DNA from: Asterias rubens
Taxonomy: Eukaryota
Assembly: GCF_902459465.1 (NCBI RefSeq)
Contig: NC_047079.1
Coordinates: 2,480,001 to 2,544,000 of the forward strand
DNA: 64,000 nt
Reading direction: 5' to 3'
In this document: in pieces, positions 23,932-59,020 of the stretch
Layout of the letters: each line of letters begins with the position of its first letter
Position numbering within the stretch: position 1 is the stretch's first letter
Notes under the pieces: generated by a model
What the model was told of the DNA's origin: nothing
The model's input: only the letters and a program-made list of their open reading frames with translations
Database searches by the model: none
Made by a program: the position numbers and the translations under genes

Positions 23932-23989
23932 GAGGTCTAAATCGGTTTGTCCTTGACACGTAATCGTTAAATGTGAAACACAATGCGGA

Positions 23990-25657
23990 CTAGATCGTGT
24001 TGGTAGGTTTTGAATGAAATAAGTGTGCAGCCAAGAGGTCTTCTCCTTTCAGATCATATGGGAATCTTACCCACTCATCCATCGCGAGGGGTTTTACAGC
24101 CGAACCGAGCTTGGCTTCAAACAAAGACAACATTATTATCCTGTGTAAACAGATATACCTCTGAAGTCCAACAGGAGAGATGTTATTGGAAACTGAAAGG
24201 CGTTTTTTTATCAGGTGTATAACGAATTCTGCTGCTTTTTTGGTTCTCCCGCTGCAGAAACGGAGTAAGTATTCGATTCTTTCTACGTCGCCGTCTAACA
24301 ATTTTGACATGTGATCATTAAATTTGTCTGGATTTGACTCTGCCATACCAGAAAGGTACACGGAACAACAAAACTGCATGAATATCATGTGGTAGAAATG
24401 GACTTGTTCAACCTCTTCTATACCGTGCATGAATTGAACTCGGGTCAGCAAGCCAACTTCACATCCCAAACTGACAAGGTCTTCTGAATCAAACTCTGAA
24501 ACCGTGAAGGAATTTTGTGCATGGCTTTTTTTCATTAAACTCTCAAGTGCAACCTGCCCAAGTTTTGCAACCAGCTCATTAAACGCTTTTTCTGTAAGCT
24601 TCTCGGAGGGCTTGGATGTGCAGTATTTGCTCATCTTTTGCTTATGGATTATGTTGACTGCGTCACTGAGCAGTTCTGTAATCCTGTCTGGTAGTCGACT
24701 TCCGGCCTGTGTTAAAGACGAACACATCAGCCAAAGAAACAGAGGAATCTCCCCTAAACTGCGCAGTGTTTCCGACTTACTTATTTCAGAAAGTACATAA
24801 TCGTGATATTGGGGATCAAAGTTGCTGAAATAGTTGCGGATATATTCTTTCTTATTTTTTTCATCGAATCCAACTATATTTACTCTTGTGAAATCTGGGT
24901 TGCAAGTCAGTAACTTAAGGGCCGTAGACTGACGACTTGTTACAATTACCTTACAGCGTTTAAGCGACTTGAATGAGAGGACATTGTTAACACTGAAGTC
25001 TTCGTTTGCCATTTGTAGTCTCTCGAATGGGATTTCGTCTGCTCCATCAAGAAGGATGAGAACTTTCTCTGGGTTTTGTGTCATATAATTCTCAACACTC
25101 TTTTTCCCAAAATCATTGTGAGGCAATATTTGAGAATATATTTCATCTGTAATATTGAACTTTGCCTTCATTTGGTTTATTTCCAACAAAAAGACGAGCT
25201 CGTACTTTGACAGAGGCGACTCTCGTTTTTGTTGAGTCACGTGAGTATCCCTCTGTAAAACAGCCCAGTCATAAGCTATCTTCTTTAAAAGCGTTGATTT
25301 ACCATACCCACTTTCAGCAGTGATTAAGATTCTGTTCTTATCAAAGCTTAACATGTCTTCGTATGACTTGAGGGGAATTTTCTTATACTCTGTTCGGGTT
25401 TTATCGGTCTCGTTTTCGCCGTTTAATGTCAATGTGTACTGTGTGATCGGTTTCATGTTTTCCTTTAACTAAACTTGACTGCAATATGAGTGGCTTATCA
25501 GGTTGGTTTGTTTCTTGCAAAAGTTCTAAACTTACATAAAGTTGATCCATATCACGAGCTAGATGCTTAGCTGTAGGATGTGTGTTCACTTTCATTGTTT
25601 CCTTGTAATGACTCACCAAAGTCTCAACCAGCGCTTTGCAGTGCAGATCCATCTCAC
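23990..25657 (-). pseudogene. NLR NACHT/winged-helix/HD2 region, 5' part of the large terminal exon, with two +1 frameshifts
   Basis: Phase-1 acceptor gtacag|GT at 25657. Walker A ITAESGYGKST, Walker B LILLDGADE, sensor-1 VIVTSR, IPLFLWLMC and FYHMIFMQF. Frame changes fall in windows 25404-25468 and 23993-24048. Confidence 0.9.
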
Positions 25658-28776: not shown

Positions 28777-30185
28777 ACGTACAACACGTGTTGAGTCACG
28801 CTTCAGTGCTCATCCATAGAGCGCAATGCTTCTTCGTTCAAGGCGTTTTTAACATACAGTTCCCTTACGATTACTACTAGTCTGTACTGTACAGTCGTCA
28901 ATATTTCATAAGTTCATATTTCCCAAACCACAGAAGCTATTTTGACAATCTATACATCATATTGAAGGGCTCTACGTACTTTACAAAAACGGATATGTTG
29001 GTGACCTTCTCGTGACCTTTTGACCTGTCTAAACCAGCAGTACCTGTAATATACTTTGAAAAGACGTCATGTAATGGCTTTTGGGTTGATACATACACCT
29101 TTTCATGCTTTACCATTACAGAATACAACTCTGGCAAAGGTCTGGTTTAAACAAATAATACCGATTATGTCACCAAATGTAAGAGCGCCCTCTAGCGGCA
29201 GATTAAAAACATCTCAACATATACTTCTACTATGTCTGTGGTAGAGTTTTTGATAATTGTTTCAAAATTGGCACATAATCTCCCTCACAATAGCAACTTA
29301 TATGTGGAGTCTTAGCTTGATGACGTCATCATTGCTTTAAAGGTGCACTTTTGCAAAGCTGAGTGTATGCCAAACCAAAAGTTCGACTGAGGTGAAACTT
29401 GTTGTATTGTTAGTCAAGGACATTAACTTCTTGAACCCGAAAAGACGTCATGATGACGTCATCGTGTTGTTTCGACATGTTTTGTTAGTTACAAATCTTG
29501 AGACGAAGCAAGTTGCAATATTTGTTTTTTACACCAGGCTTTTTACTCCCGGAAACCGAACACCTAGAGTTTGTTCACAAACTCTCAATGTCTAGTTCCT
29601 ATTCATAAATGTCTTTTTGGTTAAAATGCGTAATAAACGAAGAAACTCTGTGAAACTTATCCGTTTACCACGTGCTTGAGCTCTGTACGTCCGTGTGTTG
29701 CATTGTTATGACTTGAGGCGACAGTTTTCGGATCCAATAGGAGACTTTCTGGGATGATAGAGGGCAGCAGACTTACCGGGTAAATCCATTGTTCTCAGAA
29801 TTATGCGCATGTTCAGAACTACGTAAACAATGGAAATTTACCCGGTATGTCTGCTGCCACCTAGCGTTGGAAAGTCTCCTATTGTGCACGTAGTCTTGGT
29901 GCAGGACGATTCTCGTTTTCCTTTCACACACAGCGCGAGCAACTCACCGACAGCGCCCGCATCGCCCTTCAACGAGAAACGTCTTGCACCAAGATTAGCG
30001 CGTAGTATGCATCTCAACGTATCCAAAAACAACCGGTTATAAACAGCTCCAACTGGTCTTTATCAACCGTTCAAACACTCCAACATGAAGCGCTCTCCAC
30101 CAATAAAGGAATAGCGAAACTGTCTGAGGTATTTTTGAATATATAAGTAAAATGGAAACTTTCTGGTTTTTAAAATAAAGCATAC

Positions 30186-30512
30186 CTAATTCTCTGACAA
30201 TGTCAGTACGACCAATTTCTTTAAGTGCCTTCTTCAGCCCGTCCTCAGCCGTCTCTTGGTTTGGTTGCCTTCTAAACCAACCCAGTAGCATCTGGAAGAT
30301 TTGTTCGTTGAGGTCATTTTGGTAATCGCTTTGATATGCGTAAATCTGTTCAGTTTCAAAACCTAAAAAAGTGCCGAGTTTCTTCCAATCTTTTCCAATC
30401 TTTCCGGCTACGACTCGTAACATCTTTTCATCAACACCTGATACTTTTGTTATTGACTGATGTTCTGATGACTGCCTGTTGTGAACTTTGTCTAGGGATG
30501 TGCGTGCATAAC
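30186..30512 (-). CDS. NLR exon: death domain 2 (phase 1-1, 327 nt)
   Basis: VDEKMLRVVAGKIGKDWKKLGTFLGFETEQIYAYQSDYQNDLNEQIFQMLLGWFRRQ...LKKALKEIGRTDIV fits the death-domain pattern. Flanked by ttatag| and |gtatg. Confidence 0.85.
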
Positions 30513-30832
30513 CTATAAGGAGAAAAGCAACCGAAAATTGCGTTGTATTCATTGTATTAATAAAATAATATATCTGGATATATTTCTATAAAGTTTTGCT
30601 GACATAATTTGTTTTGAAGCAAAGGTGAACATGTCGCTAACAACTTTGCTAGTAAAGTTGAGCCAATACTTCTCTCTTAATACTTATGCATGACGTCATA
30701 ATTCTTACCCAAAATGAGGCTATGGGCGCACTTCCCCCATCACTTGCAGTGGCTGCGCCCATCGCCTCGTTTTGAGTTAGCTTTGCGACGTACCTCATGC
30801 ATAAATATTAAGAGAGGCGTATGGGAACCAAC

Positions 30833-36285: not shown

Positions 36286-36530
36286 NNNNNNNNNNNNNNN
36301 NNNNNNNNNNNNNNNNNNNNNNNNNNNNNNNNNNNNNNNNNNNNNNNNNNNNNNNNNNNNNNNNNNNNNNNNNNNNNNNNNNNNNNNNNNNNNNNNNNNN
36401 NNNNNNNNNNNNNNNNNNNNNNNNNNNNNNNNNNNNNNNNNNNNNNNNNNNNNNNNNNNNNNNNNNNNNNNNNNNNNNNNNNNNNNNNNNNNNNNNNNNN
36501 NNNNNNNNNNNNNNNNNNNNNNNNNNNNNT
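36286..36530. other. Assembly gap (N run)
   Basis: 245 N. Confidence 1.
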
Positions 36531-39960: not shown

Positions 39961-41995
39961 GCTAGGTCAGCTCGGAGAAAAATAACAAAAAAGTATTATT
40001 GGCAAAGATCTTTTTGTTGAAAAGCTTACTGGTGGTTAAGTTCACATTTGAACTATTTTTTTCTGTCTCTGAAATGAAGTTTGTTAATATCAAGAACTAC
40101 ATGAATGAAAACGTCTCATCAGCATCTGAGCAAAAAGTACCTAACATTGTTACAAAAAAATTACCTGAAAGGTCCTATCTAGATTGTTTTGTTTTTCTAG
40201 TATAGCCAGGTTCAAATCTCCTGCGAATGTGAATGCGATACGAATGTTGATATCAAAAGTTCACAAATAATTTGCAGAGGTTGAATTGTGCGAATATTGC
40301 ATTGTGCGAATATCGCAGCGAAAACAGAGTTGTGATGTAAAATTCAAGTAAAATCCGTATCGAATTCACATTCGCAGGAAGTATGAACCAGGCTTGAGGC
40401 TTTCAATTTTAAATTTAAAAAATATTCAGAAAGATAAATTCACAAGCATGCAAAAGTTTCAACTCAATTCGGGGTCTGTTAGCTTGAGAAAAAAACCTTT
40501 CATTTAGTACGAGGTACTCAAGTATCTTGTAAGAAGGTACGAAGTGTCAAAGGTACGAAGGTTATAAATCTTCGTTAGATTGTCGAGAAGGCTACTTACC
40601 CCACCATGTTGGTCTAACTCGGACGGAAATTTACTTCCAATCGGTTTCAAGGAGCAGTGTCGGAACGCTCGCATTTTCACGCGAAATCTCGAAGGGGTCC
40701 GAGGCCAGCTCTCGCTGCAAATGAAATCGAGCTCTACGCTTCATTATCGAGCACGGAGCGCACGGACTGTATCCTGATGATCCTCTTGGTAATAAGTCAT
40801 GACATTAATTTTTGAGAGGGAATGTGGTGCAATGAATATTCATGTACCTACTTTGCATATCATTTGTTTACACTGTGCCTCTGTTTCCAAAACGTCCTCA
40901 CTTAATTCCGATAAGAACGTGGCAATTTTTTAGGGTTTGTGTACTTTTTGTTAACACAAAACACAATGTCCAAAGATTTACATTAAACTTACACCGTTTG
41001 AAGAAAGCTTCCCTTGGGGTGATGTTTTATCAGACAGGTGAACTTCGATATCTCGCGTATTGTTGTTTTCGTCAGTTGTTGGTTTTGGTGTTTGATTTCC
41101 TAGTTTATAGCGGTGCCCAATTTTGTGTGATTTAGTAAAAGCATTGTGTAATAACAATGGGAGAATTTGAGGCGCTAGACGGCAGCAGACTTACCAGGTA
41201 AAACTCCATTGTTTACGTAGTTCTGAGCATGCGCACATTATCGAGAGCAATGTATTTTACCCATAGAGTCTATGGTTTTACCTGGTAAGTATGCTGCCAC
41301 CAAGCGCCCTGAAAGTCTCCCATTAATAGTTGTAACAAGTTTTGAAGAAATCAATATAAACCACAAGTTTTTAAGAATTTTAATCAATTGGAGAGACGGA
41401 CACAGACAGTTCGAAAAATTCTTGTCATAATTTTATTTCAATTCAGGACGTACTTAACAGTAATTTTAAATGAATTGTGGCATGTTTATTTGATTCACAT
41501 TACAATACAGGTTTAATTTTATCCCACCCCATCCGTCTTCATAAACTTGTCCATGTTACATTTAAGTTTTGAGTGCTTTTTGGCGGTCGTATAAACCAAT
41601 AACTGTTTCGGTCATTGACCAGTGATTTACCAATGGTCAATTCAACTGAAAACAGTTACTTTTGGTACGACCCCAAAGCGCCCAACCTGTTGTGCGTCAC
41701 TTCATGCGTCTGAAAACCTATAAAACCCTTGGGCTTGTAATACATCATGCCTGTAATAGGGGAACAGAGTGTTGAAATCCAAATTAATTACACAGTTTTC
41801 GAAGAAACATACGCGGGACCATGGTCATTTTCAAAATCATAGCTTAGTATAAGCTTTGACTGCGGATTAGGCTCCGTCTCCCAACAGCAAACGTTTTTAA
41901 AACGACTGGAAGGAGAGTAGTATGTAAGGCGTATATGACCTCCTTTTTATAAGGAGGGTCATGACCCTCAGTCATGAGGGTCTTCGATCTACCCT

Positions 41996-42793
41996 ATGAA
42001 GCACAAATCATTCGTCTTGGATCGTCTCACTGATATAAAAATGGAGTCGAAGCGTCTAAACACTTTGCTTTGACCAGTACAGGTAAAGGTTTCGTGTCCG
42101 ATTTGTGGGAAGAGCTTTTCGCGTAGCGACAATATGAAACGACACCGACAGACACACAAGCACCCCAGTATCGGAAGCCAATCGAAAGCTTGTCCTATTT
42201 GTGATAAGGTGTTTTCCACTTCAAACAATTTGAAGAAACATCTTCAAAATCATAAGGAGGAGGAGGAGGAGGACCTCCTCGAAGGTGATAGTGGCGAGTC
42301 CACAGAAGGGGAGGATTTTGAAGATGAGGAAGTGGAGTGGGAGGAGCTTCATGAAGACGATAGTGATGAATCGACAGATGATGATGATTTTGAAAATGAA
42401 GACGTGATGGAGGAAGGGGACTACCGTGAAGATGATGATAGTGATGGACTAACAGATGATGATGATGGCCATGAAAATGAAGGAGATGAGGAGAAGGAGG
42501 AGTTCCTTGAAGACGATAGTGGTTAATCGGCACATGATAAGACTTATGAAAGCGAAGAATTGGAGGAGGAGGAGGAGGAGGAGGAGGGATTATGTGAAGA
42601 CGATCGTGATGAATCAACTGATGATGACGATTTTGAAGATGAAGAGGAGGAGGAGGAGGAGGAATTTCAAGAAGACGATAGCGATCTATCAACAGACGAA
42701 AGTGCTTATGAGAATGAAGAGGAAGAGAGCGGGAGACGTGCAACGAAAATACTGAATTTTTCGATAAAGAATGCTAAACTTATGTTGAAATGA
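41996..42793 (+). pseudogene. Two C2H2 zinc fingers plus a long Asp/Glu repeat tail; one frame with two premature stops (Polinton cargo)
   Basis: CPICGKSFSRSDNMKRHRQTH and CPICDKVFSTSNNLKKHLQNH. In-frame TGA at 42071-42073 and TAA at 42524-42526, the latter where the repeat consensus has GAA. Track ORFs 42134 and 42560 share this frame. Confidence 0.8.
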
Positions 42794-45700
42794 TGAAAGG
42801 TTTTTCAATCCTACACCCCAAGATTGTATTGTTTGATTTGGTGTAACCCTGACCCAAATGAGGTCTCAGGTTACAGTATATTTTGTGTTTTACAAAATAT
42901 GATCTTTATTTCATTGTGTAATTTTGATTTCCCTTTTTTTCATTGCTCATGTGTTTATTCCACATGTGCATTTTCAATTTGCCATGGTTGTGCATTTTCT
43001 CTGGTCATGGTGTCCCTTTGTTTATTGTGTTTACCAGCCATGCTATTCAAATGGTGTTTTAACTCATGCTCTTTGATCTTCACCTATCTATTCAACTATG
43101 CTTATAATCTTTACCTTCTTGGAGGAAGTGGAGATACACCTTTTGTTTCCTTCTGGGAATGGCCAGTACCCTTTTTCTTTAATCCATGACCACGAACCCA
43201 AGCTGTGAAGTCGTAAAGATTTATCTTTACTTCACTCCCTCTATTTCAAATGGACCAATCAACTTTAGAGCCATAAGTGATATTTTTCAAACCATCCAAT
43301 GAGAGTAAACAGCTGACCTAAGCTGAGGCATGGTCGGAGGCCTGGCTTGGCCCAAAATTCTGGTCAGACCAAGCACTCCACCATTTGCCATCGCTCCAGC
43401 TGGATGTGTGTCCGCACATGCCTCTACGACTATCTTTTCTTCAAGTGCTTGTTAAATCATTTCTCCAAGCAACTTTCTTATTCTGGAGTGAAGACAACTT
43501 CTACTTTTAAATGAATGTTGGCTCTCTATAATAGGTGAGTTTTAGTATTTAAGTAATATTTGTAACTTGTTATTTGGATGTTTCCAGTAAGGTCTCTGTT
43601 GAAGTTAGAATTTGATTTATGATTTTTGAATTTCACAGACAACCTTTAAACTTTCATTTTTATTAAATGTATTTCCTTAAATTCTCTTAAGCACTTTTGT
43701 TTTATATTTAATTCTATGATGAAAGATCTATCATGCTATTATCTGAATTGGAGAAACAGATCTTTATGCTTTTAAGCATGTATGTTTTAAGTTCTTTAAA
43801 AAGATTTGTTGCAACTTTTTTTGATTTATTGAGGAGAGACCTACATGCATTTGCTTTTGCCGATTTCTCATTTTGTATTCTTGATAAGAACTAACAGAAT
43901 AGTCATGATATTTACCACCAGCTGATTCAGTTGATGTATTGTGGTAAGTCATGCTATTCGTGCAGTCCTCATTACTTGGACTGGTTCTGAATACTATCAA
44001 GATATATTTTAGGTCTGCTGTGTTTTAAGTTTTACAATGTACATGTATATACTTTATATTTTAATGGCAATCCCGCATAAGACTTAAAGACACAAAGTGT
44101 TGTCTAGTGATAGAGTTTTGCATAAAAGCCAGATTGTGCTTTTGTACCCGAGGGTACTTCATACCTTATTTTATGTATTTTGCACTTGCTTAGATTTTAG
44201 AGAATGTGCTGTTTGATGTAACACTTTTAGCTCATTTAAGCTTGGACTATTTTAAGTTTGCTAAGCTGTCTTAATGAGACAGATGACAATTTTGATATGC
44301 TACATGAGGGAGTAATTTTCTCCTTGTAGCCAGATAGCCAAAAGTATTGGCTTATCTTTATTTAACTTATTGGCTTGTGGAGTTTTTTAACAAGTATTTG
44401 ATATAATACTATATTTCCCGAGCGTTCCATCAGTTAGCTGACTGGATATTTTATATTCCTTGAGAGGATTGTATTGTAATATGGCATGGACCATTATCGC
44501 TCTCTATAATAGGTACAGAAGACGGAATGTGGTGATGAGGAAGATTGACTGGCCCTCTAGATAACTTCCGTCCATTTCATCTGTGACCTATCGCAAGTAT
44601 AACAGTTTTTAACATTCTTGCATTTGCAAGCTTACATGTATACCGACAACGTCCTTCCGTGATAAGAGGAACTCACTGGATCGTCTCCCAACTGATGTTT
44701 GGACCTCGCCCGTAGGACGCGAACCGCGGTTTAGGATCTATTTTAGATTTGGCGCCCGAGCTCATTTTTGTATTATTTAAATATTACAGGATCCTTTAAT
44801 TGTAAAGTTTATATTCTGTATTTCTTTTATTGGTGATTTATTGTTCAAATAAATCAGAGTTTCTGTTATTGTGCATCATATCTCGAATTCTCTAAACTTG
44901 GTTTTATTTCAAAAAGGGAGTTGTAAATTCATTTTCGGTTCCCGCTATTTTTGTTGGCGAACCCAGGGTTACATTTGTAACAATACAGAACAGTATTATC
45001 AACGGAAATTTGTTAAAGCATAACAATCTATCAACTGTAAACACTATGAGGGTTTTAATAAGTGAACTCGCCACACATAAAAATAAAAGAAATAACAATA
45101 ATAATATTAACAATAATAAGATGAGTACAAATAAATTAATATATAAAATATACACAAAACAAAAAACAAAACCATGAAAACGATTATGTCTTTGCTCTAG
45201 TTTCCAACAATCTCAACCCATCCACCTTATCTCCTTAATAGGCAGGCCGGGGTCGCTGGGGTCCAATCAATCACCTACATGCGAACGCAGATTTCAAAGT
45301 TCTTGTCATAATGGGGGGGGGTCTTCGTCATTTATAATTGTTTTAAGTATTGTGGAGGTTTTAAGTAGATGTTATTGTTAATGGAGTGTTATATACCGAA
45401 TAAAGTTTTTGGTTAACGTATATCTTGTTTTTCCGTGTATACTCGTTTTCTCTGCAGCCCCTTTTTGCAAAGGTAAACACAAACATAATACCGTGTCCGA
45501 GTGATTGTGGTACATGATGTGGGCTTGGAGTTATAGAAAACAAAGACAGCTCCACTGTATATGGGGAACAAGAACTGACACGTTTGGCTGGTAGACCAAT
45601 CAGTTGTGACGTCATCTTTTAACTACCAGATAAGGCTCAGTGATCAAGGGTCATTGAGGTTTTCACGTAAACCATGCACCGGTCTTTTTGTTTGTACACG

Positions 45701-46248
45701 AAGTGAAGGCCACTGGCAATTACAGATTAGGCTAGTAATTATTAGATTCTATTATGACACCATAACTCTATTTAACGTTTAATCTTTTTAGAGAACGATG
45801 GAAATAATATGATCGTTTGCAGAAACATATCCTGGATATGCACCGTAAGTTTATAAGTCCGTACATAAACGTACGCATAGAAAACTATCTGTTGTATTGC
45901 AAACTGCTTAGGCCTACCAAAACAAAAAAAAAAGAAAGGGGGGGCGTGTAAATGCAAACAAACTAAACATTTATTCTTTTTTGTTTCCGATGGCTAACTC
46001 GGTTGTACCCACACTTTGGGGCTCTTATTTATTCAAAGTAGTGTAGATTACCGGTGTTGTCGTCAAAAGTTTAAATCATTGTATGTGTAATACAAAAAAA
46101 AAACACGACCTTGTTTATATATCGTCGGTCTTTGATTGCAACGCTATATTGCTTTTGTAAGATCGGTACCCTTTCTTCGTATTTTCCATAAAGTATTTAA
46201 TTATATTCAATTATGATACTATTACTGTAATGTACACAGTATTTAAAC

Positions 46249-46284
<36 letters not shown>

Positions 46285-46900
46285 GTATTATTATTGTTTT
46301 TTTTTATTATTACCATTATTGGTTTATTAAAAATGCAAACATGGTTGTCAAAATAGCCGAATTGTGGATGGATATTATACAAAGAGTAAAAAGAAAAAAA
46401 AAAAGAAAAAAATTATTAGACGTTATATTTAAATAATGGTTCGTGGCGGCATTCCAACAGAGCCGTTTTATTTTTGAACAAAGGAATCAATTAGTGCACC
46501 GCAATACAGAAATGTATACGCCACGTCCGTTTAATTGGGCCTTCCGCTCGGTTGTCGGTCAGGCAACTGAGAGCAAGTTCAAACGACCAAAAGAACTAGC
46601 GGACACGTCAATCTTGACCGAGGGGTGATTCTTAAACGAGTTATTTGCATCGAGAAATGGCCCATGTTCTTCATGTTTTTCTTGTAACCATTGTTAGGTG
46701 ATTCAATTATGTAACAACAAAAACAACAACAACAACAAACGAACATTTAGAGCAGGTTCAGACACGATCAAAACTTGGTAGACGACATCAAAATTATCGG
46801 CCCGTACACTCATGAAGGGGTGTGTTACTAACGACGGTTGTTTGCATCGAACAATGTCTCTTTAATTTCCTTAAACTAATCATGCCAGTTGATACAAGCT

Positions 46901-47050
46901 NNNNNNNNNNNNNNNNNNNNNNNNNNNNNNNNNNNNNNNNNNNNNNNNNNNNNNNNNNNNNNNNNNNNNNNNNNNNNNNNNNNNNNNNNNNNNNNNNNNN
47001 NNNNNNNNNNNNNNNNNNNNNNNNNNNNNNNNNNNNNNNNNNNNNNNNNA
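46901..47050. other. Assembly gap (N run) inside the Polinton-like element
   Basis: 150 N. Confidence 1.
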
Positions 47051-47246
47051 CACCCCTTACACATCAATCGAGCAACCCGGTCCAAAGTCTGCTAGGGTAG
47101 ATCGAAGACCCTCATGACTGAGGGTCATGACCCTCCTTATAAAAAGGAGGTCATATACGCCTTACATACTACTAAGGAGCCTGAAGCCGCAGTTGTCTTC
47201 AAAAAGGGCCTGGACGACTTATTAAAAGAAAAAACGGTCAATTGTT

Positions 47247-50200
47247 TTAGGAGCAAGTGACGTCACCTGATGTCTTGTTATCTATCCAATCACAGTACTG
47301 TGATATACGTGTGTAGACGCCTGGGTAGGCGGGGTCTGCACATCCTATACCCCAGCTTACGATCCCTGTTAATGTTACACCATTTACGTGCATATTCTCG
47401 TCAAAACCAGTCACGATGGGGCCACCGCTATCTTGCTGCAGAAATTGTAAAAAAAAAATCATTCAATGAAATACATAAGAGACTTTTTTAAAGTTATACT
47501 ATTCTACAGAGTGCATCCATGTGTATAGTTTTATTATTTTGTATTGTTCTCTTGAATTATACACCAAGTCTTGATTGGCTCGAACGGGCTGGGCAAGTCA
47601 ACTAATCTGGATCCAAATTGGTTCGTTCTGAACAAGATTGCTGTTTGTTTGTTACAGATGTCTCTTCTCCGAAACTGGTATTCAGTAAAGTACTTTTTCA
47701 AATTAAAATAAATATTATGATAAAAAAAAAATATATTATATATATAAATTAATCTAGTTTAAAGTTGTTTTTATAAATTCATCACTGTAACTATCTGATG
47801 TAAGTAACCCCCCCCCCCTTTTTTTCCACAGGTCCCTCATACCTATTTTTAAAATCATCATACCTTTGATTTTGCTATTCTTATTAATTGACCATTGTTA
47901 GTTGCATCATGATGCAACTTGCTCTCTAATCCTACCCTTTCATGTCTCCCTGCATTGTTGTCGAACAATACATTTACCACTTTTATGGTCCAGTAACCCA
48001 TCCTTTCATTCTAAACATCCTTTGTCCTCGCCACTTCACTCCTATTGGTTCATAGCCACCAATATTGTCTCTGAAATAGAAACTTTGATTGGCTGTTATT
48101 TTTCCCGCTTCTTTCTGGATCCTTTCCTTAATCCCTTTCCCCCTCTCTTTTTCTATAAATGGATATGTATTTGTTTGTACTTTGTTTTATGCCTCTGAAG
48201 AAGGTCCGGATTGGATCGAAAGCTAAGGCCATCTACCCTATTCATTATATATATACATAAGGAAGGGTAACTGGACCATAAAAGTGGTAAATGTATTGTT
48301 CGACAACAATACAGGGAGACATGAAAGGGTAGGATTAGAGAGCAAGTTGCATCATGATGCAACTAACAATGGTCAATTAATAAGAATAGCAAGATCAAAG
48401 GTATGATGATTTTAAAAATAGGTATGAGGGACCTGTGGAAAAAAGGGGGGTTACTTACATCAGATAGTTACAGTGATGAATTTATAAAAACAACTTTAAA
48501 CTAGGTTAATTTATACTTTATGTACAGAATATATACAACATATAAGTTCTTAGGCAGAAGTGAAGTGGAGGGTAATGAGAAGTTATTTAACACCAGTGTT
48601 TATGTTAAGTCCAAAGGGTTTGACTGTCTTGAGTTGGTGAATCCAGTGTGATTCTCTATTCTTGCGGTGTGTGTCATCACCATTGCAAGCTTCAATCACC
48701 AGAAGTTAAACATCAATGACACTATGATTGGGGCTGTTGAAGTGGATAGAGACTGGGTACGGTTTCTTAGTCTTTATGGAAGAGACATGATTCGCAAAGC
48801 GAAGACTAAGTTTGGTCTTAGTCTCTCCCACATATTGTAGCCCACATCTCTTACATGATATGACATAGACTACATTAGACGTGCTGCATTCAGAGTCGGT
48901 CTTGATGTTGTATGAAGAGCCAGTGGTATGACTCTTCACCTTAAGTGAGGGCTTAATGTGCAGACACGTTTTGCATTTGGAACGGGTACATTTGTGACAG
49001 CCCAGTATATCTGTCGGGGTTTGTGTTTGGACTGTACCTGGGGGAAGTTTGGCCCTGACTAGTATGTCACCAAGGTTCTTAGGGCGGCGGAATGCAACCA
49101 TGGGAACCTCAGTGATTGCTGAGTGTAACCTGCTGGAGGAGTGAAGTATAGGCATGTTATTATTGAGAATTGAGGGAAGTTTGGGTAGTTTGGGGTGGAA
49201 GGTGGTGACCAAAGCAACTCTATTGGTAGGAGCTTTTTTAGCTCCCGTGTTAGTCAACAGAGTATGACGAGGTACGTTGAGAGCCCTGTTGATAGCAAGT
49301 TGGACCCTACGTTCGCTGTTTCCCCTAGATACAAGGTGTTTCCTTAGCTCTGATGAGCGCCTCTTGTACAGGGTATCTGTGGAACAGATACGCCTGATAC
49401 GTAAGGCCTGACTGTAAGCAATTGCCTTCTTACAGTGACTAGGGTGACAGCTATTGGAGAGAAGGTACTGGTGGGTGTCGGTGGGTTTACTGTAAACATC
49501 TGTGACAAGGCCATTAGGAGACTTGGTTATTGTCACATCTAGAAAGTTCACACTGGTGAGAGATTGTTCGGTAGTGAACTTAATGGTGGGGTGAAATGAG
49601 TTGATATGGTCAATAAACTCATCCAAGCTGTCTTGGTCACCACACCAGATGGAGAAAATATCATCACTAAATCTCCACCAAACTAGTGGTCGGTTGGGGG
49701 CGGAGGACAGGAGTCTGTCCTCCAACTGAGACATGAATAGGTTAGCATATGAGGGTGCCATTTTGGTACCCATGGCAGTACCCTGTACCTGTAGAAAATG
49801 CCTGTCAGAAAATGTGAAATTATTCTTCTTTAATAGAATGTGGCTCATGAGTTCCTTAATATGACTCACTGAGGGGCGGGACTGATTACTAGCATTGAGG
49901 GCAGAGACACATGCACTCATGCCTTCATGATGGGGTATGTTAGTATACAGTGATGAAACATCAAAAGTAACCAAAATAGCAGAGTCAGGTATTTGGTGCT
50001 TGACCTCATCTAGTTTGTGGAGAAAGTCTTTGGTATCCTTGATGAAGGAAGGAATACGGCAGACTAAGGGTTTGAGGAAGCTATCGACAAACTCAGAAAT
50101 GCGCTCTGTGGGGCTACCATTCCCAGATACAATAGGTCTCCCCGAGTTATTGGGCTTGTGTATCTTAGGTAGAAGGTAGAACCTTGCTGTACAGGGGTCA

Positions 50201-50751
50201 TGTGGGAGGAGATAGTTAAATGTATCTTTCTCAATATCATTGGCATTATAAATCTTAACCAGGGTGTCACTGATATCTTGGGAGAAAGATTCAGTGGGAT
50301 CAGAAGCACATTCAATGTAATGATCAGTGTTACTGAGCTGTCTAAGGCCCTCAGCAATGTAGTCATGTGTGTTCATGACTACAACTGCGGACCCCTTGTC
50401 AGCCCGTTTAATCACTATGTCTGGTGATTGGCGGAGTTGTGTAAGGGCGTGACGCTCATCTTGGGGGAGGTTGTTGGGAGTAGGGGTACTGGGGGCCTTA
50501 AGAACCTCGGAGTTAACCGAATTGATGTATGTCTCTAGAGACACATCTCGGTTCTTAGGGGGTACCCAAGTACTCTTTTCCCTGAAGCGGTTGCGGGGAA
50601 TAGGTTGGGTCTCCATTCTCTCTGAGTGCCCGGCCCCGAGCCGGCGGGTCGGGCCTCGCACCAATTTAAAGTTTGAGAATAGGTTGAGGTCGTTTCGGCT
50701 CCAAGGCCTCTTATCATTCGCTTTACCGGATGCAACTGCAACTACCGGGCG

Positions 50752-50794
<43 letters not shown>

Positions 50795-53700
50795 CGGCTC
50801 GATTAGTCTTTCGCCCCTATACCCAAGTCGGACGATCGATTTGCACGTCAGAATCGCTGCGGACCTCCACCAGAGTTTCCTCTGGCTTCGTCCTGCTCGG
50901 GCATAGTTCACCATCTTTCGGGTCTTACATATATATACATATATATAATAATATAAATAAATAAACAATATAACGACAGAAGTCTTGTTTGGATAGTTTG
51001 GATACCTTGCGTGCTTGTGTCGATGTCATGAAAGTTTTTGTGGTTTGATCCCACCATGAATAAAAATTTCCTTCATGATTGATCCCAAAAGGAAGTTGGT
51101 TCAAAAGAGGGCGCTATATCTCAGACAAAGTTGCTACTCGTACGGGGGACAGATTCTGCCGTTGTCTTTATAGGGAAATCGGTCCGCCGGCGATATTTCT
51201 GGGAAATTAGCATTGGTGAAGGAGGATGATTCAAAAGAGGGCCGGCGCTATCAGAAAAAGTTTGACCACAGTTGGCCGTATGAGGAACAAATGCTCCGGG
51301 GGACAGAATCTTCGTCACACCGTTGTCCCGGGAAATTCTGTCCGCCGGAATGAAAAATAGCGAGCTTTCTCATGACGACGGTAGGCACACACGGCGGAGA
51401 GTGGTATAGCACAGTAGTCCCTATGCTCACACTCGAGTGCTCCCGTTCTGTATGTGTGGACCGCCCGGTGACGTAGAATTGATTCAAGTCCCAGTACCGT
51501 GAGGGTCCTTTTTTTTTGCAGTCCCATCGCCTAACCATCAGACAACTTTTGCGCGGTTGGCACCCGCAACCTAGCCCCATGTGCCTGGCCGAGTCTATCA
51601 CAAGGCTCCCCCACCATACAATGTGTACAAACGACATCACTCCGTTGTCGTACAGACCGGACGTTGTTTCACCAAAATAGCGTTCCCAATCTCTACACGA
51701 TAGAGACTACTTCAATTTGGCGCATGCGTCGATCGATGTTTCTGCTCCCTTACACTGATCTCTATTATGGGTACGTTCGTTTAGCTTCCCTGGGTCGACC
51801 CCGTCGTGTGGCGTTTGTCCTTTCCAGGACGAACGTTCGTCCTGGGAAAAAAACGCCAAACACCGGGATAGACCCAGGGCAGCTAAACGAACGCACCCTA
51901 TATACAATCAGTAATCCCTTATAGCGTATTTTTTTCCCCAGGAAAGATGAGGCCACTAAGCATGGGCGAAACCAACCAAGCGTGTCTAGAGTTCCCTCTA
52001 TACACGTGTGTACTTGTATTGCATAACCATGCGAACTCCATGCGGTAACATGTAGCGTCCTCCGTCTTTCCGTTTCGGGACGGTAAGGCCATGGAGTTTT
52101 CCTCCATATAAGGCACACGTTTTTATTGTAGCCTCTTCTTCCCTGGGAAAAAAAACACGCTTAGAATTTGTTACCGTCCTGTGTACTACCGTCCCGAAAA
52201 ACGAAAGGTCGCTAATAGCATGGGCTGAAGGAGGATGATTAAAAAGAGGGCGCTACATAGTTCGACGCATGGGCCGGGGAACATAATCTCCGGGGGACAG
52301 GATCTCCGGGGGACAGGATCTCCTGTCTGCCCCCTATGTGGAACTTTAAAACGTGGGCTGAGGGAGGGTGTTTAAAAAGAGGCCGCTATCAGGAGTACAT
52401 TAGTTGTTTTACATATAAATCGGGTTCTTTATGTTTGTGGTTTGTACACAGTTTGCTCCCGACATGTTAATATTATCAAACAACTTTTTACATGATACTT
52501 ACCGTGCAGCTATCTTTACCAGGAGCTTTGGCACAGAACATGTTAGTATTAATCGGAAAGCCATCGGTCGCATAACTATTCTTGCAAGTACTTCTGCTTA
52601 CGCCCTTTACAACAACTTGTCGTAGAACCTTGGATAAGTCGCCACCATCTGCAACAGAAAGACCATAATGATTATGGATTATTCTAGCGACTTGCCGCCT
52701 GAATGTCAGAACGGAGTTTTATCATGGAAACCACACAAACAAGGGGAGAAGTATTATTATTTTTTTTTTTCTTGGGCGCGTTTCTATGTCTGGCTGTCTC
52801 GTAGTTTAAATTGTGCCTTTATTTTCGTTACTTACCTGTAGATAAAATGAATCGGTCCTTATTTTAACTTACCTTCTTACAAACTTAATGGAATAGTCTT
52901 ATTAATAGCATAACCCAAACTAGTTTAGATTTGTGCGTATACTGTCAACTATGTGGTATGTTCCTTTTCGGTTGGAACCAGCCTTTGTTGCACACACACA
53001 GTGCTTGTTGTACCATTAGTTACTTTGTTCATATGGCGGAATGTTTCTTTAAAACTTTAACTTGGATTTCATTAGGCTTAATGTAGCATGTAGAAGTGAC
53101 AATAAAAGCGTAGCCTAAACAACCGGCTACAAAAATTTTATTGTAAGTGTCCCTTTATTTTCAGTTAGTGGTAGAATATAGAATAGTACAAGAATACCAA
53201 GAATAAGTAGTTAGGGTGGGGCAAAGAGAGTGGGTGAGAAAGGATATTATGTGAAAATGCTGTGCGAAGGCAGTTGACTTCAAAAGCTGAGAGTGAGAGC
53301 ACGTGTGAGGTTCTGCGATATAGCCACCAACCAGTGCATGTAGCTAAACGGACTTGTGCATCAGTTGGCATACAATTTTTTATGCCGAAGCCAAAGCTCA
53401 GTAAAATTAGCCACTGAGGCAAGTCATTAAAAGTTTAACTCGGTATTGCCGCAAGCCAGCGGAAACATTGTATGATGGCCAGCAGACCTAACCAGCACAA
53501 CCCAAGAATACTACGCATTGAGAAACCATGGCATTGAGTGAGGATTGGAGATTAAACGGAAGAACTGAGAATGATATTGATGACTGAAATTGCCAGGACT
53601 GTTACGGGGCTACCTACTGAAGCCAGGGTATACAGAGTCCACAGAAGACAGGGAAACGTCTGAAGGGCCAGTGGTCTGAATTGCCTGTTACTAATTTTGA

Positions 53701-56700
53701 ATGTAAAATAAAACGTGTACAGTTTAAAGGCAGTGGACACTATTGGTAATTACTCAAAATAATTATCATCAAACCTTTCTTGATTACAAGTAATGGGGAG
53801 AGGTTGATAGTATAAAACATTGTGAGAAACAGCTCCCTCTGAAGTGACGTAGTTTTCGAGAAAGGAGTAATTTTCCACGAATTTGATTTCGAGACCTCAA
53901 GTTTAGAATTTAAGGTCTCGAAATCAAGCATATAAAAGCACACAACTTCGTGTGACAAGGGTGTTTTTTCTTTCACTATTATCTCGCAAATTCGACAACC
54001 AATTGAGCTCAAATTTTCACAGGTTTGTTATTTTATGCATATGTTGAGATTCATCAACTGAAGACTAGTCTTTGACAATTACCAATAATGTCCAGTGTCT
54101 TTAAGTGAATAAGATAATCAAAGGATTCTGGTTTCAGGACTTATTTCTGTTTGTTTGAGAACTCGGTTCTGACACTGGCTTTTGGGGAAAAGTATCTTCT
54201 TAAGCTTAAGATGTCAGCTGAACTTTAGACAAAAATAGACTTTCAGCGGTTATCCTGAGTTACGTGCAGAAATGACGGTCTGGAGAGAACCAGCAGTAGA
54301 AGTGCCACCACAACTATTCAATAATACGACTGGAAAATCCCCATGGGTTTTTCTATTTCGCAGGTTGTACCTTTAAATCAAAACTAATAAAATAATGCTT
54401 GTATTTTGTACATGGCATATACGTCGTTTGTGCCAAAGCAATGCGTTTACACGATATGCAAACAAGCGCCATAAGCCTATTATATCAAGAACTCATAGAG
54501 CTGCTCTTAACTTGCCGATTTGTTTTCTCATTTTTCCTTCTTTTTATGTCTGCTGAGCGAAACACAAGCAGGGCACTTTTTTAACTTGGAATTCGACAGT
54601 TAACAAGACTTTGTTACACACAACGTGTTTTTGCGAAGTGAGTGCCATAGTCTATAAAAAGATTTCATACTCGCTAAGTTGTCTTCCAAGCGATAAGCAA
54701 AAATATAAGCGGGATATAAAGAAAGTACCAGGTGGTTGTCTAACTGGTCACCTCATCTGGTAAGGGAAATGTTGGCACTATTGGTAATTGTCAAAGACCA
54801 TTCGTCTCACTTGGTGTATCTCAACGTATGCATAAAATAACAAACCTGTAAAAATTTGAGCCCTGGTGGTCGAAGATGCGAGATAATAATGGGAAAAAAA
54901 ACACCCTTGTCACACGAAGTTGTGTTCTTTCAGATGCTTGATTTTGAGACCTCGAAATTCTAAATCTGAGGTCTCGAAATCAAATTCATGGAAAATTACT
55001 TCTTTCTCGAAAACTACGTCACTTCCTGTTTCTCACAATGTATATTCTCACAATGTATAATGTTATATTATATAACACCCAAGCAGATCCTTGCCATTTG
55101 ATTGGAGGATTGTCCGTCACGTGATAGCAAATAAAAGTACCATTGCACGCTGAGTCACTCACCGTGCTTTTTCGTTCCATCCGAAAAGTACCATTGCACG
55201 CTGGCAGCGTGCAATGGTACTTTTCGGATGGAACGAAAAAGCTGAGTAAAAACATCACTGCGTGCGCGTGTCTTTGGTAACGCAGCAGGTGTTACTGCAA
55301 GAAGGCATAGTAAAATTACTAGCATTCGGCTTCTACAGTTGAAATTGTTTGTTTTGAAAGTTGTATCTTTCAATCAAAATGACAAAGATCTACTTGGATG
55401 TTATATAAAACAAATAATGAATGTTTTTCATTCGTGCAATGGTACGAATATGTTCATTCGTTGAAAGCTGGAATGTTCCATTCAACTCGGCTCCGCCTCG
55501 TTGAATAGAACATTCCATCTTTCAACTCATGAACATATTCGCACCATTGCACTCATAAACATTCATTATGTGTAAACTATCAACCTCTCCCCATTACTTG
55601 TAATCAAGTGAGGTTTTATGATAATAATTATTTTGAGTTATTACCAATAGTGTCCACTGCCTTTAAGCTATCATGACATTGGGTCCAGTTCTTCACACCT
55701 ACCTTTAACTCTTCCCCAGCCGCTGACCAACAGACTGGTTCCCGACGCAACATCACTGTTAGCACTCACGATAGGAATAGTCTGCACCTGGTTGGAGAGC
55801 ACCACAGCGTTATCCAATTTGATGAGTGCGATATCGCTGTCTATTGTCGCGGGGTCAAATTTGTCATGCTTTATCCATTTGCCTTTGATGATAGTAGCGC
55901 CATCTGCCGCCGTGTCGCGTAGATCGTGGAAGCCAACACCTACCCACACATCAACTGGACTATTTAAATAGAAAACAAATAACACCAGCTCGAAAGTTTT
56001 ATCATTTTAATAAGGATTGTGTTTCGTAATTTAGACATACAAATATTTACAAGTATGCGTAAACTTTACTGCATAGCTAAACGGGGCTGGCCACTACTGC
56101 AGCAGTGTGGCGCCCTCGCGTGAAGCTGTGCATTTTCATTGTTTCAACATGGCGGCAGGATGACGTCATTGAATAAGGTCCGTGATAAGCCTAGATTTGA
56201 CAATGCAAGAATGATCCTTTGTAAAACAAAACAAAAAAGTGAAGTGCGAAATGTTTCTTGGTTTGACATGCGGATAGTGAGAAAGACGGAAGTCAAGTCT
56301 GGAATGAAGGTATCTTCGTAAAGGTAGTGGACACAATTGGTAATCACTCAAAATAGTTGTAAGCATAAAAACTTACTTGTTAACGATCAATGGAGAGCTG
56401 TTATATTGTGAAAAAAAACGGCTCCCTCTGAAGTAACGTAGTTTTCGAGAAAGAAGTAATTTTCCACGAACTTGATTTCTAGACCTCGGAAATAGATTTT
56501 GAGGTATCGAAATCAAGCACCTGAAAGCACACAATTCTTGTGACAGGGGTGTTTTTGTCTTTCATTATTATCTCGCAACTTCGCCGACCAATTGAGCTCC
56601 AATTTTCACAGGTTTGTTATTTTATGCATATTATGTTGAGATACACCAAGTAAGAAGACTGGTCTTTGACAATTTACCAAGATTGTCCAGTGTCTTTAAA

Positions 56701-59020
56701 GCATCATGCTGTATGCCACTTACCCAACACAGTGAGCTGCCGACAATACCCACTGTGGGTGAACAAGGGTACCACCACAGAATTGATCTTCACCATCGTT
56801 ACTGCCAAGAATTGATACCTGGTACGGGCGACTTTCCAACGGGGCCTCCACTCCCCCGACGATCAGACTCCGGGAATCGATAAGATGGCTTGATGAAAAC
56901 CCTGAATTATTGTAAAAAGTACAGTGTCTTTTATATTTTAAGTATCACATTTTGTTCGAGCATTAACACAGACTAAAAAAAGGGCGGCGCAAAAAAAATT
57001 GTAAAAAGTATATATTAAAATTTCGACTAAAAAAATCCCACAACAATAGGAGACTTTTGCACGCTAGGTGGCAGCAGACTTACCAGGAAAAACAAAAAAG
57101 TTCATTGTTTACTGTGGCCCTTTTCGAAACCACGGCTTCGGCTTTGGATTCGGCTTCAGCCCGTCTGAAGCCCAGAGCACGTATACGCTCAATGTCAAAA
57201 CAGTCAATCTAGCCTAAGCCGAATCTGGAGCCGAAGCCGTGGTTTCGAAAAATGGCCGTAGTTCTGAGCACGACATTACCGAAAACAATGAATTTCACCT
57301 GGTAAGTCTGCTGCCACCAAGCGTTCCAAAAGTACCCTACTGTAAAGGAAAAATTGTATAGATAGATAGATAACTAGATAAACAAATAAAGATAACAATA
57401 ATGCGACGGAAAGCAGACCTACCAAGTCTCACGCATTAGGCGTGAGACTCACGCATTTGGGCTCTGTCTCACGCTCACACGCACAGCAACCATTTTCTGA
57501 CGCATTGGGGCCAGACCGGGACAAAAATAAAAAATAACGACAATGCATTGCCAAATCGCGCTCGTGTGTACAAAAAACGCAATCTACAATGTAGATTGCA
57601 CGCAGTTTATCAGAATCATCAACTTGCTGCCGTACAAATAGAGCGCAAATTTGCAGATTGCGCACGCTTTTGCTCTCCCAGCAGGTTCAGCTTAAATTCG
57701 GCAGAGCGCAAAACGCTTATTGCGCACAAGTTTTCCCCGGTTCGTTTAGCAAATTCGTTAAATGCGCTCCACTAGCGAAGACACAACAGGCAGAAGAAGT
57801 GAGCGGACGATTTTGGACATCATTTTTAGTCGATTTTTTATTTTGGGGGGAACTAATCTGACACAATCGTACCTCCACATTAACCATCAACATCTCCTGT
57901 GTACCTCATGTGAGTTTTAATTATTCTGAACAGGTTTTTTTATGCATATAAAAAAAAAGTTGGGCGGCGATTTCGAAAGGCCTTCTAAATCTGACGATTT
58001 TTTTTTCCGGGGGGAGGGGTGGTGGTGAGCTTTGAAAAATCTCACGCAAAGCTGGCCTCTGGACTTGGCATCTCTGGGAAAGAGATGCCACGCTTAGAAA
58101 AAAACTAAAATTAGAAAATAATTAACAGAATCTACGATAATATTTATTCTAGTGACCGGTTCGATCAATGCTTAACTTTGCTCCCAAACTGTGGTAGCTA
58201 TTTCCTAGAAAGTGGCTTTTACCAGGATTTTGCCGGTGTTACGATACGAAAGTGATGAAAAGAACGACAAAATTTCATGGCAATTATTTCGTGTGTTATT
58301 CTTCTAGTGTGTAAGACACCAACAAGTTGTCTGTTACGCACCCTCTCAACTGTAAACCGGTCATCACAGTGCGATTACCGGTTAACAGTAGGAACGAATT
58401 GTTCTCCTATGTAGGCCTGATGCGTTGTCTATCTCTCTCATTCCATTGCTCTTTGCACTGTGTGGAGTTTATGCACTCAATCGTGAACAAAACTAGACAA
58501 TGTACACGTGGAGAGAGAGACAAATGCTACATATCTCCTTTTTAGGGACACGATTAAGCGCACAGAAATACGAAACAAATCTGGAGCAAGAGGCACCAGT
58601 AGACAATTCATAAAAACAAGCTTTTAAAGCCCTTGGCACACTTGGTAACCAGGACAGGTGAGAAGATGGAGAGATGACATCAGGGTATGTTATACAGGAA
58701 CAACATGGACAAGAAGTGCAAGAAACAAAAACAAACGGCATAGGGCGACATCCTACACTGGGTAAACACAGCCTGAACGATGATGATAAAATCGAGAGTG
58801 AAGAATATGCAAATAAATATTTGGTTACCTCAAACCCCTTCACTTTGTTTCCATTTGAAAAATCATGACTTTTTGACTATTTGATCAACCCCAAATCGAG
58901 AGGGAAAATAATATGCAACTACCGTCAATCTTCCATTGAGTTATCTCAAACCTCTTCACATTACTGTCTGTACTTACCTAAAGCCAGGGAGAGGCTGACA
59001 AGAAACACTGCGACTCTCAT
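47247..59020 (-). CDS. Secreted trypsin-like (S1A) serine protease C, 5 exons (59020-58978, 56901-56724, 55959-55703, 52648-52503, 47435-47247), 270 aa
   Basis: GT-AG introns in the same phases as gene B, total 813 nt. It has IVGG, LSAAHC, DIALIKL, GKDSCT|QDSGGP, SWGIGC and YPGVYT. Confidence 0.92.
47735..48245 (+). mobile_element. Inverted copy of the Penelope 3' end (pLTR), tail-to-tail with the element
   Basis: ~47735-47997 is the near-exact reverse complement of ~48266-48512. The copy extends a further ~240 bp to a hammerhead motif and is bounded by (TA)n tracts. Confidence 0.8.
48191..48229 (+). ncRNA. Minimal type-I hammerhead ribozyme of the Penelope pLTR type
   Basis: gcct-CTGAAGA-a-ggtcc(ggatt)ggatc-GAAA-gcta-aggc: intact core, stem II, stem I (gcct/aggc) and a palindromic AGCT in place of stem III. 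Confidence 0.75.
48583..50616 (-). mobile_element. Penelope-like element ORF (RT + Cys-rich linker + GIY-YIG endonuclease), 5'-truncated and inactive
   Basis: [47 protein letters not shown] (usually Y/FIDD) and NVVY..YVGET. A premature TAA at 48706-48708 precedes the in-frame tail [26 protein letters not shown], which ends at 48583. Confidence 0.93.
50613..50924 (-). pseudogene. Dispersed 28S rRNA fragment (domain II, including the GTPase-associated centre) fused to the Penelope ORF
   Basis: Minus strand reads GACCCGAAAGATGGTGAACTATGC...TAGTAGCTGGTTCCCTCCGAAGTTTCCCTCAGGATAGC...AACCTATTCTCAAACTTTAAA. The LR5 primer sequence TCCTGAGGGAAACTTCG is at 50759-50775 on +. Confidence 0.95.
57414..58076. 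mobile_element. Non-autonomous DNA transposon with CAG...CTG ends and a 6-bp TSD (GGAAAG), hAT-like
   Basis: cagacctaccaagtc versus the reverse complement cagagatgccaagtc. GGAAAG is immediately outside both ends. Confidence 0.55.

What the first reader, a model, noticed from the sequence alone, without database searches (positions are those of the whole stretch)
41910..47179. Miniature Polinton/Maverick-like element: perfect ends, short TIRs, no visible viral core genes
Seen: 81-bp perfect TIRs beginning AGTAGT, a perfect 6-bp TSD (AAGGAG) and 5258 bp as assembled. The TIR is packed with overlapping palindromes (gggtcatgaccc; gaccctca-gtca-tgagggtc; gacctcctt..aaggagggtc). No pPolB, integrase, ATPase, protease or capsid ORF is recognisable. 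Known: (AGT)n termini and 6-bp TSDs are hallmarks of Polintons, which are usually 15-20 kb with TIRs of hundreds of bp. Inference: a non-autonomous satellite mobilised in trans. Its ends are pristine although its cargo ORF has two stops, suggesting it moved after the cargo decayed. Caveat: a 150-N gap 42 bp inside the right TIR could hide more sequence.
Basis: partly seen in the sequence, partly recalled or inferred. Interest (0 to 1): 0.78.

Follow-up and report, generated by a model that had tools for sequence, protein, structure and literature searches.

The report
Short Polinton-ended transposon carrying zinc-finger pseudogene
A 5.3-kb insertion in an echinoderm-type genome has the end signature of Polinton/Maverick virus-like transposons but none of their genes in the readable part, so it is most likely a defective passenger copy; this kind is already catalogued, and one unread gap leaves its true size open.

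Summary
There are perfect 81-nt inverted ends (41916-41996 and 47093-47173), a perfect 6-bp duplication (AAGGAG), termini reading 5'-AGTAGT...ACTACT-3', and 5258 bp as assembled. This is the end motif published for Mavericks/Polintons: (AGT)2//(ACT)2, 6-bp duplication, TIRs of 46-1447 bp (PMC8097293).

None of 140 stop-free pieces (24 aa or longer, six frames) of the readable 5109 nt matches a Polinton core gene. The only domain hit is a pair of classical C2H2 zinc fingers. They head an acidic-repeat ORF (42041-42793) that is broken by two in-frame stops.

Two related metagenome contigs carry the same zinc-finger unit without these ends, and with a piece of the element's interior inverted upstream. 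The cargo is therefore not tied to the termini.

The insertion lies 67 nt past the stop codon of a trypsin-like protease gene.

Several things are untested. I found no sister copy bearing the ends, I did not look for a partner element, and the 149-N stretch 43 nt inside the right end could hide more sequence.

Verdict: probably a non-autonomous Polinton-type element, a new member of a known kind (Repbase already names such families). Interest is moderate.

The parts
41910..41915 (.). Left copy of the 6-bp target-site duplication (AAGGAG)
   Evidence: identical hexamer at 47174-47179
41916..41996 (+). Left terminal inverted repeat, 81 nt, begins AGTAGT; two adjacent hairpins at 41935-41962 and 41963-41982
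42041..42793 (+). Cargo ORF: two classical C2H2 zinc fingers followed by an acidic repeat tail. Broken by two in-frame stops; no frameshift seen. Starts 44 nt inside the left TIR and reads inward
42092..42262 (+). Zinc-finger domain (two fingers) of the cargo ORF
   Evidence: zf-C2H2 8.9e-16, residues 7-28 and 39-60 of window:42074-42523:+; 59 codons compared with L001 give 3 synonymous and 0 non-synonymous differences
42255..42736 (+). Tandem repeats of 72-87 nt encoding the D/E-rich tail
44974..45457 (+). Interior segment that lies upstream of the zinc-finger unit, in the opposite orientation, in related contigs L001 and L002
   Evidence: 74-88% identity
46253..46282 (+). Run of 30 A inside an AT-rich, ORF-free interior
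46901..47049 (.). 149 N (assembly gap or masked stretch); content and true length unknown
47050..47092 (+). 43 nt of unique sequence between the N stretch and the right TIR. It shows that the TIR ends at 81 nt and is not cut by the gap
47093..47173 (-). Right terminal inverted repeat, 81 nt, ends ACTACT
47174..47179 (.). Right copy of the 6-bp target-site duplication (AAGGAG)
47247..47462 (-). Neighbour: last coding exon and stop codon of a trypsin-like serine protease gene. The insertion is 67 nt downstream of its stop, in the 3' UTR or flank
   Evidence: Trypsin 3.8e-12, profile 179-220 of 220

Best explanation
This is a short, non-autonomous element with Polinton/Maverick-type ends. It sits in the 3' flank of a trypsin-like protease gene, in a genome record that I believe, from memory only, is the starfish Asterias rubens.

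Shown: 81-nt perfect inverted ends that start with a doubled AGT, a 6-bp duplication of the target, and no Polinton gene in the 5109 readable nt. The only coding remnant is a two-finger C2H2/acidic-tail ORF with two in-frame stops. That ORF also occurs elsewhere without these ends.

Inferred: a retrovirus-type (RVE) integrase encoded by a full-length Polinton elsewhere recognised the ends and joined them to target cuts staggered by 6 bp. The extrachromosomal copy would have been made by that partner's protein-primed polymerase. The doubled terminal trinucleotide fits the jump-back start known from adenovirus and phi29-type replication (established knowledge; an analogy here, not tested).

The interior is passenger DNA: pieces of a zinc-finger gene locus, rearranged, plus AT-rich non-coding sequence. 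One possibility is that the family once had TIRs of about 2 kb, and that this copy keeps the right arm (44974-47173) but only 81 nt of the left arm. That would explain why the related contigs show the inverted 44974-45457 segment upstream of the zinc-finger unit. This is conjecture.
For: Ends and duplication. Published Maverick signature, (AGT)2//(ACT)2 with 6-bp duplication and TIRs of 46-1447 bp: PMC8097293. 6 bp as the characteristic Polinton duplication: PMC10045372. No core gene in 140 stop-free pieces. No core gene in 103 pieces of 75 aa or more elsewhere in the window. Cargo domain. Cargo without the ends in L001 and L002; the TIR shows no significant similarity to their upstream sequence. 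Non-autonomous Polinton families are catalogued (Polinton-1N1_DR in PMC9341505; Polinton-N1A_NV in PMC11296320). Polintons occur in an echinoderm (Strongylocentrotus purpuratus, PMC4028283). Base composition matches the surroundings.
Against: There is only one copy, so neither the family nor the constancy of the 6-bp duplication could be checked. No element with the same ends was found in the window, IMG/VR, the JGI metagenomes, or among 5.8 billion proteins through an ORF that reads out of the TIR. None of these collections is known to hold this genome's repeats. The partner was not looked for. The published end motif comes from vertebrates, not echinoderms. The N stretch inside the element may hide sequence; a break within a transposon is itself a hint of something hard to assemble.
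Confidence: 0.55

Rival explanations
1. A full-length, or much longer, Polinton whose core genes lie under the N stretch. The readable 5 kb would then be an accessory region.
For: The N stretch sits 43 nt inside the right end and its real length is unknown. Vertebrate Mavericks carry accessory regions with diverse ORFs (PMC8097293). Assemblies tend to break inside long, repeated elements (general knowledge).
Against: The 4904 nt next to the left end hold no core gene and almost no ORF, which is unlike the dense gene modules described for intact Mavericks. The stretch is written as 149 N. The window's other N run is 244 N, so the lengths are not one fixed placeholder, but this proves nothing about size.
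Confidence: 0.2
2. A cut-and-paste DNA transposon of another, perhaps undescribed, superfamily that also makes 6-bp duplications. The zinc-finger ORF would be the remnant of its own DNA-binding protein, left after an internal deletion.
For: The ORF starts 44 nt inside the left TIR and reads inward, as transposase genes often do. The fingers also score on zf-BED (2.8e-6), the N-terminal domain of hAT transposases. In the zinc-finger part, the differences from the sister copies are all or nearly all synonymous (3 synonymous and 0 non-synonymous against L001; 3 and 1 against L002).
Against: The known 6-bp families have other termini: IS3EU/GingerRoot have TA..TA or TG..CA, and Ginger2 has TGTNR. 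hAT makes 8-bp duplications (my knowledge). There is no small-RNA gene at the site, as Dada would need. The zinc-finger unit occurs without the TIR in L001 and L002. No DDE domain appears in any piece.
Confidence: 0.15
3. Not a mobile element: a chance inverted repeat or an assembly artefact around the gap.
For: One arm lies in the 124 nt between the N stretch and the flank.
Against: An 81-nt perfect match is expected 0 times in shuffles. The matching 6-bp duplication has a 1/4096 chance. The right flank runs on into a protease exon. The arms are 5 kb apart, which is not the fold-back pattern of a chimeric read.
Confidence: 0.03

Closest known systems
Maverick/Polinton elements with the 5'-(AGT)2//(ACT)2-3' end motif (vertebrate set of PMC8097293)
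   Same: Identical 6-nt end motif, a perfect 6-bp duplication, and a TIR length inside the reported 46-1447 bp range.
   Different: Those elements are 12.7-24.6 kb with eight conserved genes. This one is 5.3 kb as assembled with none, and the host is an echinoderm-type genome, not a vertebrate.
Repbase non-autonomous Polinton families (named in papers: Polinton-1N1_DR, Polinton-N1A_NV)
   Same: Polinton ends without the full gene set.
   Different: I could not see their sequences. At least Polinton-N1A_NV still has a capsid gene, whereas no Polinton-derived coding sequence is detectable here.
Gene-fragment-carrying non-autonomous DNA transposons (Pack-MULE type; my knowledge)
   Same: Transposon ends enclosing a host-like gene piece that also exists elsewhere without the ends.
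   Different: Different superfamily and duplication length. Here it is not settled whether the zinc-finger unit is a host gene or belongs to another repeat.
Adenovirus-type inverted terminal repeats with a repeated terminal trinucleotide (my knowledge)
   Same: A doubled trinucleotide at the very end, the feature used for jump-back in protein-primed initiation.
   Different: No polymerase or terminal protein here; the element is integrated with a target duplication.

Membership tests
Polinton/Maverick (as a non-autonomous derivative) | 6-bp target-site duplication | tested here: met
   AAGGAG on both sides; cannot be lengthened.
Polinton/Maverick (as a non-autonomous derivative) | End motif 5'-(AGT)2//(ACT)2-3' or (AG)3//(CT)3 | tested here: met
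   AGTAGT...ACTACT; motif as given in PMC8097293.
Polinton/Maverick (as a non-autonomous derivative) | Terminal inverted repeats of tens to about 1500 bp | tested here: met
   81 nt, 100%; published range 46-1447 bp.
Polinton/Maverick (autonomous) | Encodes pPolB, RVE integrase, protease, ATPase, and major and minor capsid proteins | tested here: not met
   No hit in 140 stop-free pieces of the readable 5109 nt; 149 N remain unread.
Polinton/Maverick (as a non-autonomous derivative) | Ends shared with a full-length Polinton of the same genome | not tested
   Left out; see referred steps. There is none in the window.
Polinton/Maverick (as a non-autonomous derivative) | Several copies, each with its own 6-bp duplication | not testable with these tools
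   No other copy of the ends in the window or the reachable collections. The element's ORFs are not among the gene calls on record for this assembly.
IS3EU/GingerRoot | TA..TA (or TG..CA) termini with a 6-bp duplication | tested here: not met
   The termini are AG..CT; family features from PMC10045372.
Ginger2/TDD | TGTNR termini; 4-5 bp duplication | tested here: not met
   against PMC2836005 and PMC10045372.
Dada | Insertion into small-RNA or tRNA genes | tested here: not met
   No Rfam family at gathering score and no tRNA at the site. The family feature is from my knowledge.
hAT | 8-bp duplication, short TIRs, BED-finger transposase with a DDE domain | tested here: not met
   The duplication is 6 bp and there is no DDE. 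The zf-BED score (2.8e-6) is far below the zf-C2H2 score (8.9e-16). Family features are from my knowledge.

The most novel reading that the evidence does not exclude
An 81-nt end bearing the doubled AGT may be all that Polinton machinery needs in cis. If so, this element would be a minimal hitch-hiker that has picked up a zinc-finger gene from elsewhere in the genome, evidence that Polinton-type elements can shuttle cellular genes in an echinoderm.
Probability: 0.25. Interest if true: 0.6.

Novelty: new member of a known kind. Interest (0 to 1): 0.4.

Why it matters
Little is written about what Polintons/Mavericks need in cis. A clean 5-kb copy with only 81-nt ends, if its size is confirmed and sister copies exist, would bound that requirement. 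It would also show that these ends can carry unrelated DNA. Locally, the insertion sits 67 nt after the stop codon of a trypsin-like protease gene and may alter its 3' UTR. As it stands, this is one copy of a catalogued kind with an unread stretch inside it, so its value is modest.

Tried and rejected
1. Sister copies by DNA. Two TIR patterns found nothing in the JGI metagenome contigs or in IMG/VR. I meant these scans to find copies of the element itself. I later judged that such scans could also pull in a full Polinton of an animal, so I ran no more of them.

2. Sister copies by protein. An ORF reading outward through the TIR found no candidate.

3. Exact look-ups of element ORFs and neighbouring ORFs: none is on record. 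The record's gene calls are sparse. The look-up probably could not work, because the ORF starts with TTG.

4. Zinc-finger ORF in IMG/VR: only generic fingers in two giant-virus bins (L003, L004). I did not read them further.

5. Homology between the TIR and the sequence upstream of the zinc-finger unit in L001 and L002. MAFFT suggested a little, but shuffling showed none.

6. A second, inverted zinc-finger copy next to 44974: not found.

7. The large representative-protein search was not run. Poly-zinc-finger proteins would crowd the top 150 hits, close copies would collapse into one cluster, and the operators asked for restraint.

8. Structure prediction was not run; the domain is unambiguous.

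9. Kapitonov and Jurka 2006 and Krupovic and Koonin 2015 are not held in the library.

10. I rejected gap length as evidence. The 149 and 244 N runs are not a fixed placeholder, but I cannot tell how they were set.

That is more than the added rule allows. None of it is in the notes, the script output or this report.
Full report
**What is there**

The window holds one pair of perfect 81-nt inverted repeats, 41916-41996 and 47093-47173. A 25-nt probe from the end occurs nowhere else in the 64 kb, against 0 expected by chance. A blastn of the element against the window finds only itself. Both ends are flanked by AAGGAG. Neither the inverted repeat nor the duplication can be extended, so the duplication is exactly 6 bp; the chance of that identity is 1/4096. 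The termini read 5'-AGTAGT...ACTACT-3', and the element is 5258 bp as assembled. The TIR folds into two adjacent hairpins (41935-41962 and 41963-41982), -16.5 kcal/mol, z = -4.4.

**The gap, tested first**

The N run is 46901-47049, 149 letters. Between it and the right TIR lie 43 nt of unique sequence. The TIR therefore really ends at 81 nt and is not a longer repeat cut by the gap.

- No ORF or domain reaches either edge. ORFs listed across the gap are made of X, so the question of frame does not arise.
- The edges share no overlap or repeat.
- The matching duplication ties both sides to one insertion.

Continuity and true length cannot be settled from the window.

**Coding content**

I scanned every stop-free piece of the element in six frames against Pfam, each piece on its own: 57 pieces of 40 aa or more (A1) and 83 pieces of 24-39 aa (A2).

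- Only window:42074-42523:+ hits anything: two classical C2H2 zinc fingers (zf-C2H2, 8.9e-16).
- Everything else is noise (best E-value 0.016).
- Solved structures return only generic DNA-binding fingers such as Zif268, CTCF and ZBTB.

The ORF runs from 42041 to 42793. It starts 44 nt inside the left TIR and continues into 72-87-nt tandem repeats that encode a D/E-rich tail. It is broken by two in-frame stops, and I saw no frameshift. The rest of the interior is AT-rich, with a 30-A run (46253-46282) and no recognisable RNA family or tRNA. Base composition matches the surroundings.

**Surroundings**

The window's NACHT ORF is on record in NCBI GCA_902459465.3, record LR699109.1. By my arithmetic the window is about 2479998-2543997 of that record. 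From memory only, this assembly is the starfish Asterias rubens; the taxonomy tool confirms only that the name exists.

The neighbours are:
- An NLR-type gene: Death domain, NACHT domain and a 2113-aa LRR ORF.
- A Penelope-like retroelement with RT and GIY-YIG domains, 48709-50664.
- Trypsin-like protease genes.

window:47250-47462:- encodes the last 42 profile positions of a Trypsin domain, with its stop at 47247-47249. The element therefore lies 67 nt downstream of that stop, in the gene's 3' UTR or flank. No Polinton core gene appears in 103 further pieces of 75 aa or more from the rest of the window.

**Relatives of the cargo**

A word search with the finger region found two close proteins, P0001 (96% identity) and P0002. 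Both come from short ENA metagenome contigs of unknown organism.

- Their DNA matches the window from about the inner edge of the left TIR onward: 41979/41984-42352 for L001 and to 42172/42188 for L002.
- Upstream they share about 100 nt with each other that the window lacks. The TIR shows no significant similarity to that sequence.
- Further upstream each carries a piece of the element's own interior in the opposite orientation: 45457-45288 in L001 and 45199-44974 in L002.
- Downstream, each departs from the window at a different point.

The zinc-finger unit therefore exists without these ends and in other arrangements. In the finger part, 59 codons compared with L001 differ at 3 codons, all synonymous. 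Against L002, 33 codons give 3 synonymous and 1 non-synonymous difference. The non-coding segment is only 74-88% identical. The counts are too small to be significant, but they suggest the fingers were under constraint until recently.

**What it most likely is**

PMC8097293 reports for Mavericks:
- conserved 6-nt end motifs, the commonest being 5'-(AGT)2//(ACT)2-3';
- perfect 6-bp duplications;
- TIRs of 46-1447 bp;
- sizes of 12.7-24.6 kb with eight conserved genes.

PMC10045372 gives 6 bp as the characteristic Polinton duplication. It also shows that the other 6-bp families, IS3EU and GingerRoot, end in TA..TA or TG..CA. Ginger2 ends in TGTNR. The ends here match the Polinton signature in all three features and match no other family I could check.

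Polintons are known from an echinoderm. Non-autonomous Polinton families carry Repbase names in papers.

My best reading, at 0.55, is a non-autonomous element with Polinton-type ends. It would have been inserted by a partner's integrase (inferred from the duplication and ends), and copied by a partner's protein-primed polymerase. The doubled terminal trinucleotide fits jump-back initiation, but that is an analogy from established knowledge and is untested. The cargo is rearranged zinc-finger-locus DNA.

A family ancestor with TIRs of about 2 kb, of which this copy keeps the right arm and only 81 nt of the left arm, would account for the inverted segment in L001 and L002. That is conjecture.

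**Rivals**

- The N stretch hides the core genes (0.2). A break inside a transposon is a warning sign, and Mavericks do carry accessory regions. However, about 4.9 kb next to one end with no core gene is unlike the dense modules described for intact elements.
- Another superfamily, with the ORF as a remnant of its own DNA-binding protein (0.15). The inward-reading ORF and a zf-BED score fit this. The termini, the copies without TIRs, and the absence of any DDE domain argue against it.
- Chance or artefact (0.03).

**Limits**

- There is one copy only.
- 'Pristine' ends say little: with 0 differences in 81 nt, the 95% upper bound on arm divergence is 3.6%.
- The reachable collections are not known to hold this genome's repeats, so the empty searches do not show that the element is unique.
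- I did not look for or fetch a full-length partner, and I did not read the gap elsewhere (see referred steps).

**Novelty**

This is a new member of a known kind. The gene-carrying aspect and the short ends would be of some interest if the size and a family are confirmed.

Noticed in passing
window 47743-48005 and 48259-48515: A roughly 263-nt inverted repeat (97-99% identical arms, about 250 nt apart) lies just below the 3' end of the Penelope-like element, inside the intron of the trypsin-like gene. It may be an inverted partial copy of the kind Penelope elements often carry.
   Followed up: partly
window 41140-41330: A MITE-like palindrome, with arms around 41150-41200 and 41270-41320, about 600 nt left of the insertion site. 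Seen by eye.
   Followed up: no
window 17590-25456 and 30037-30552, minus strand: Death, NACHT and a 2113-aa ORF of very regular leucine-rich repeats form an NLR-type gene. The repeat array is so regular that the opposite strand stays open for 1344 aa (19193-23227 +). The LRR ORF is not among the gene calls on record.
   Followed up: partly
window about 1202 (-), 10208-13430 (+), 47250-56752 (-): Three trypsin-like serine protease genes or fragments in mixed orientation, found by their His and Ser motif exons.
   Followed up: partly
window 41936-41982 (and the mirror in the right TIR): The TIR palindromes are built from RGGTCA-like half-sites, for example the 12-nt palindrome at 41956-41967. 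This resembles palindromic nuclear-receptor response elements and may be a binding site for a dimeric protein. Speculative.
   Followed up: no
window 41951-41956: The target hexamer AAGGAG also occurs inside the TIR. The chance of this is a few per cent, so it is probably coincidence.
   Followed up: no
window 36286-36529: A second N run of 244 letters lies 10 kb to the left, in unremarkable AT-rich sequence.
   Followed up: no
L001 219-273: A hairpin with arms of about 24 nt sits about 90 nt upstream of the zinc-finger unit in L001. L002 has only part of it. Its meaning is unknown.
   Followed up: no
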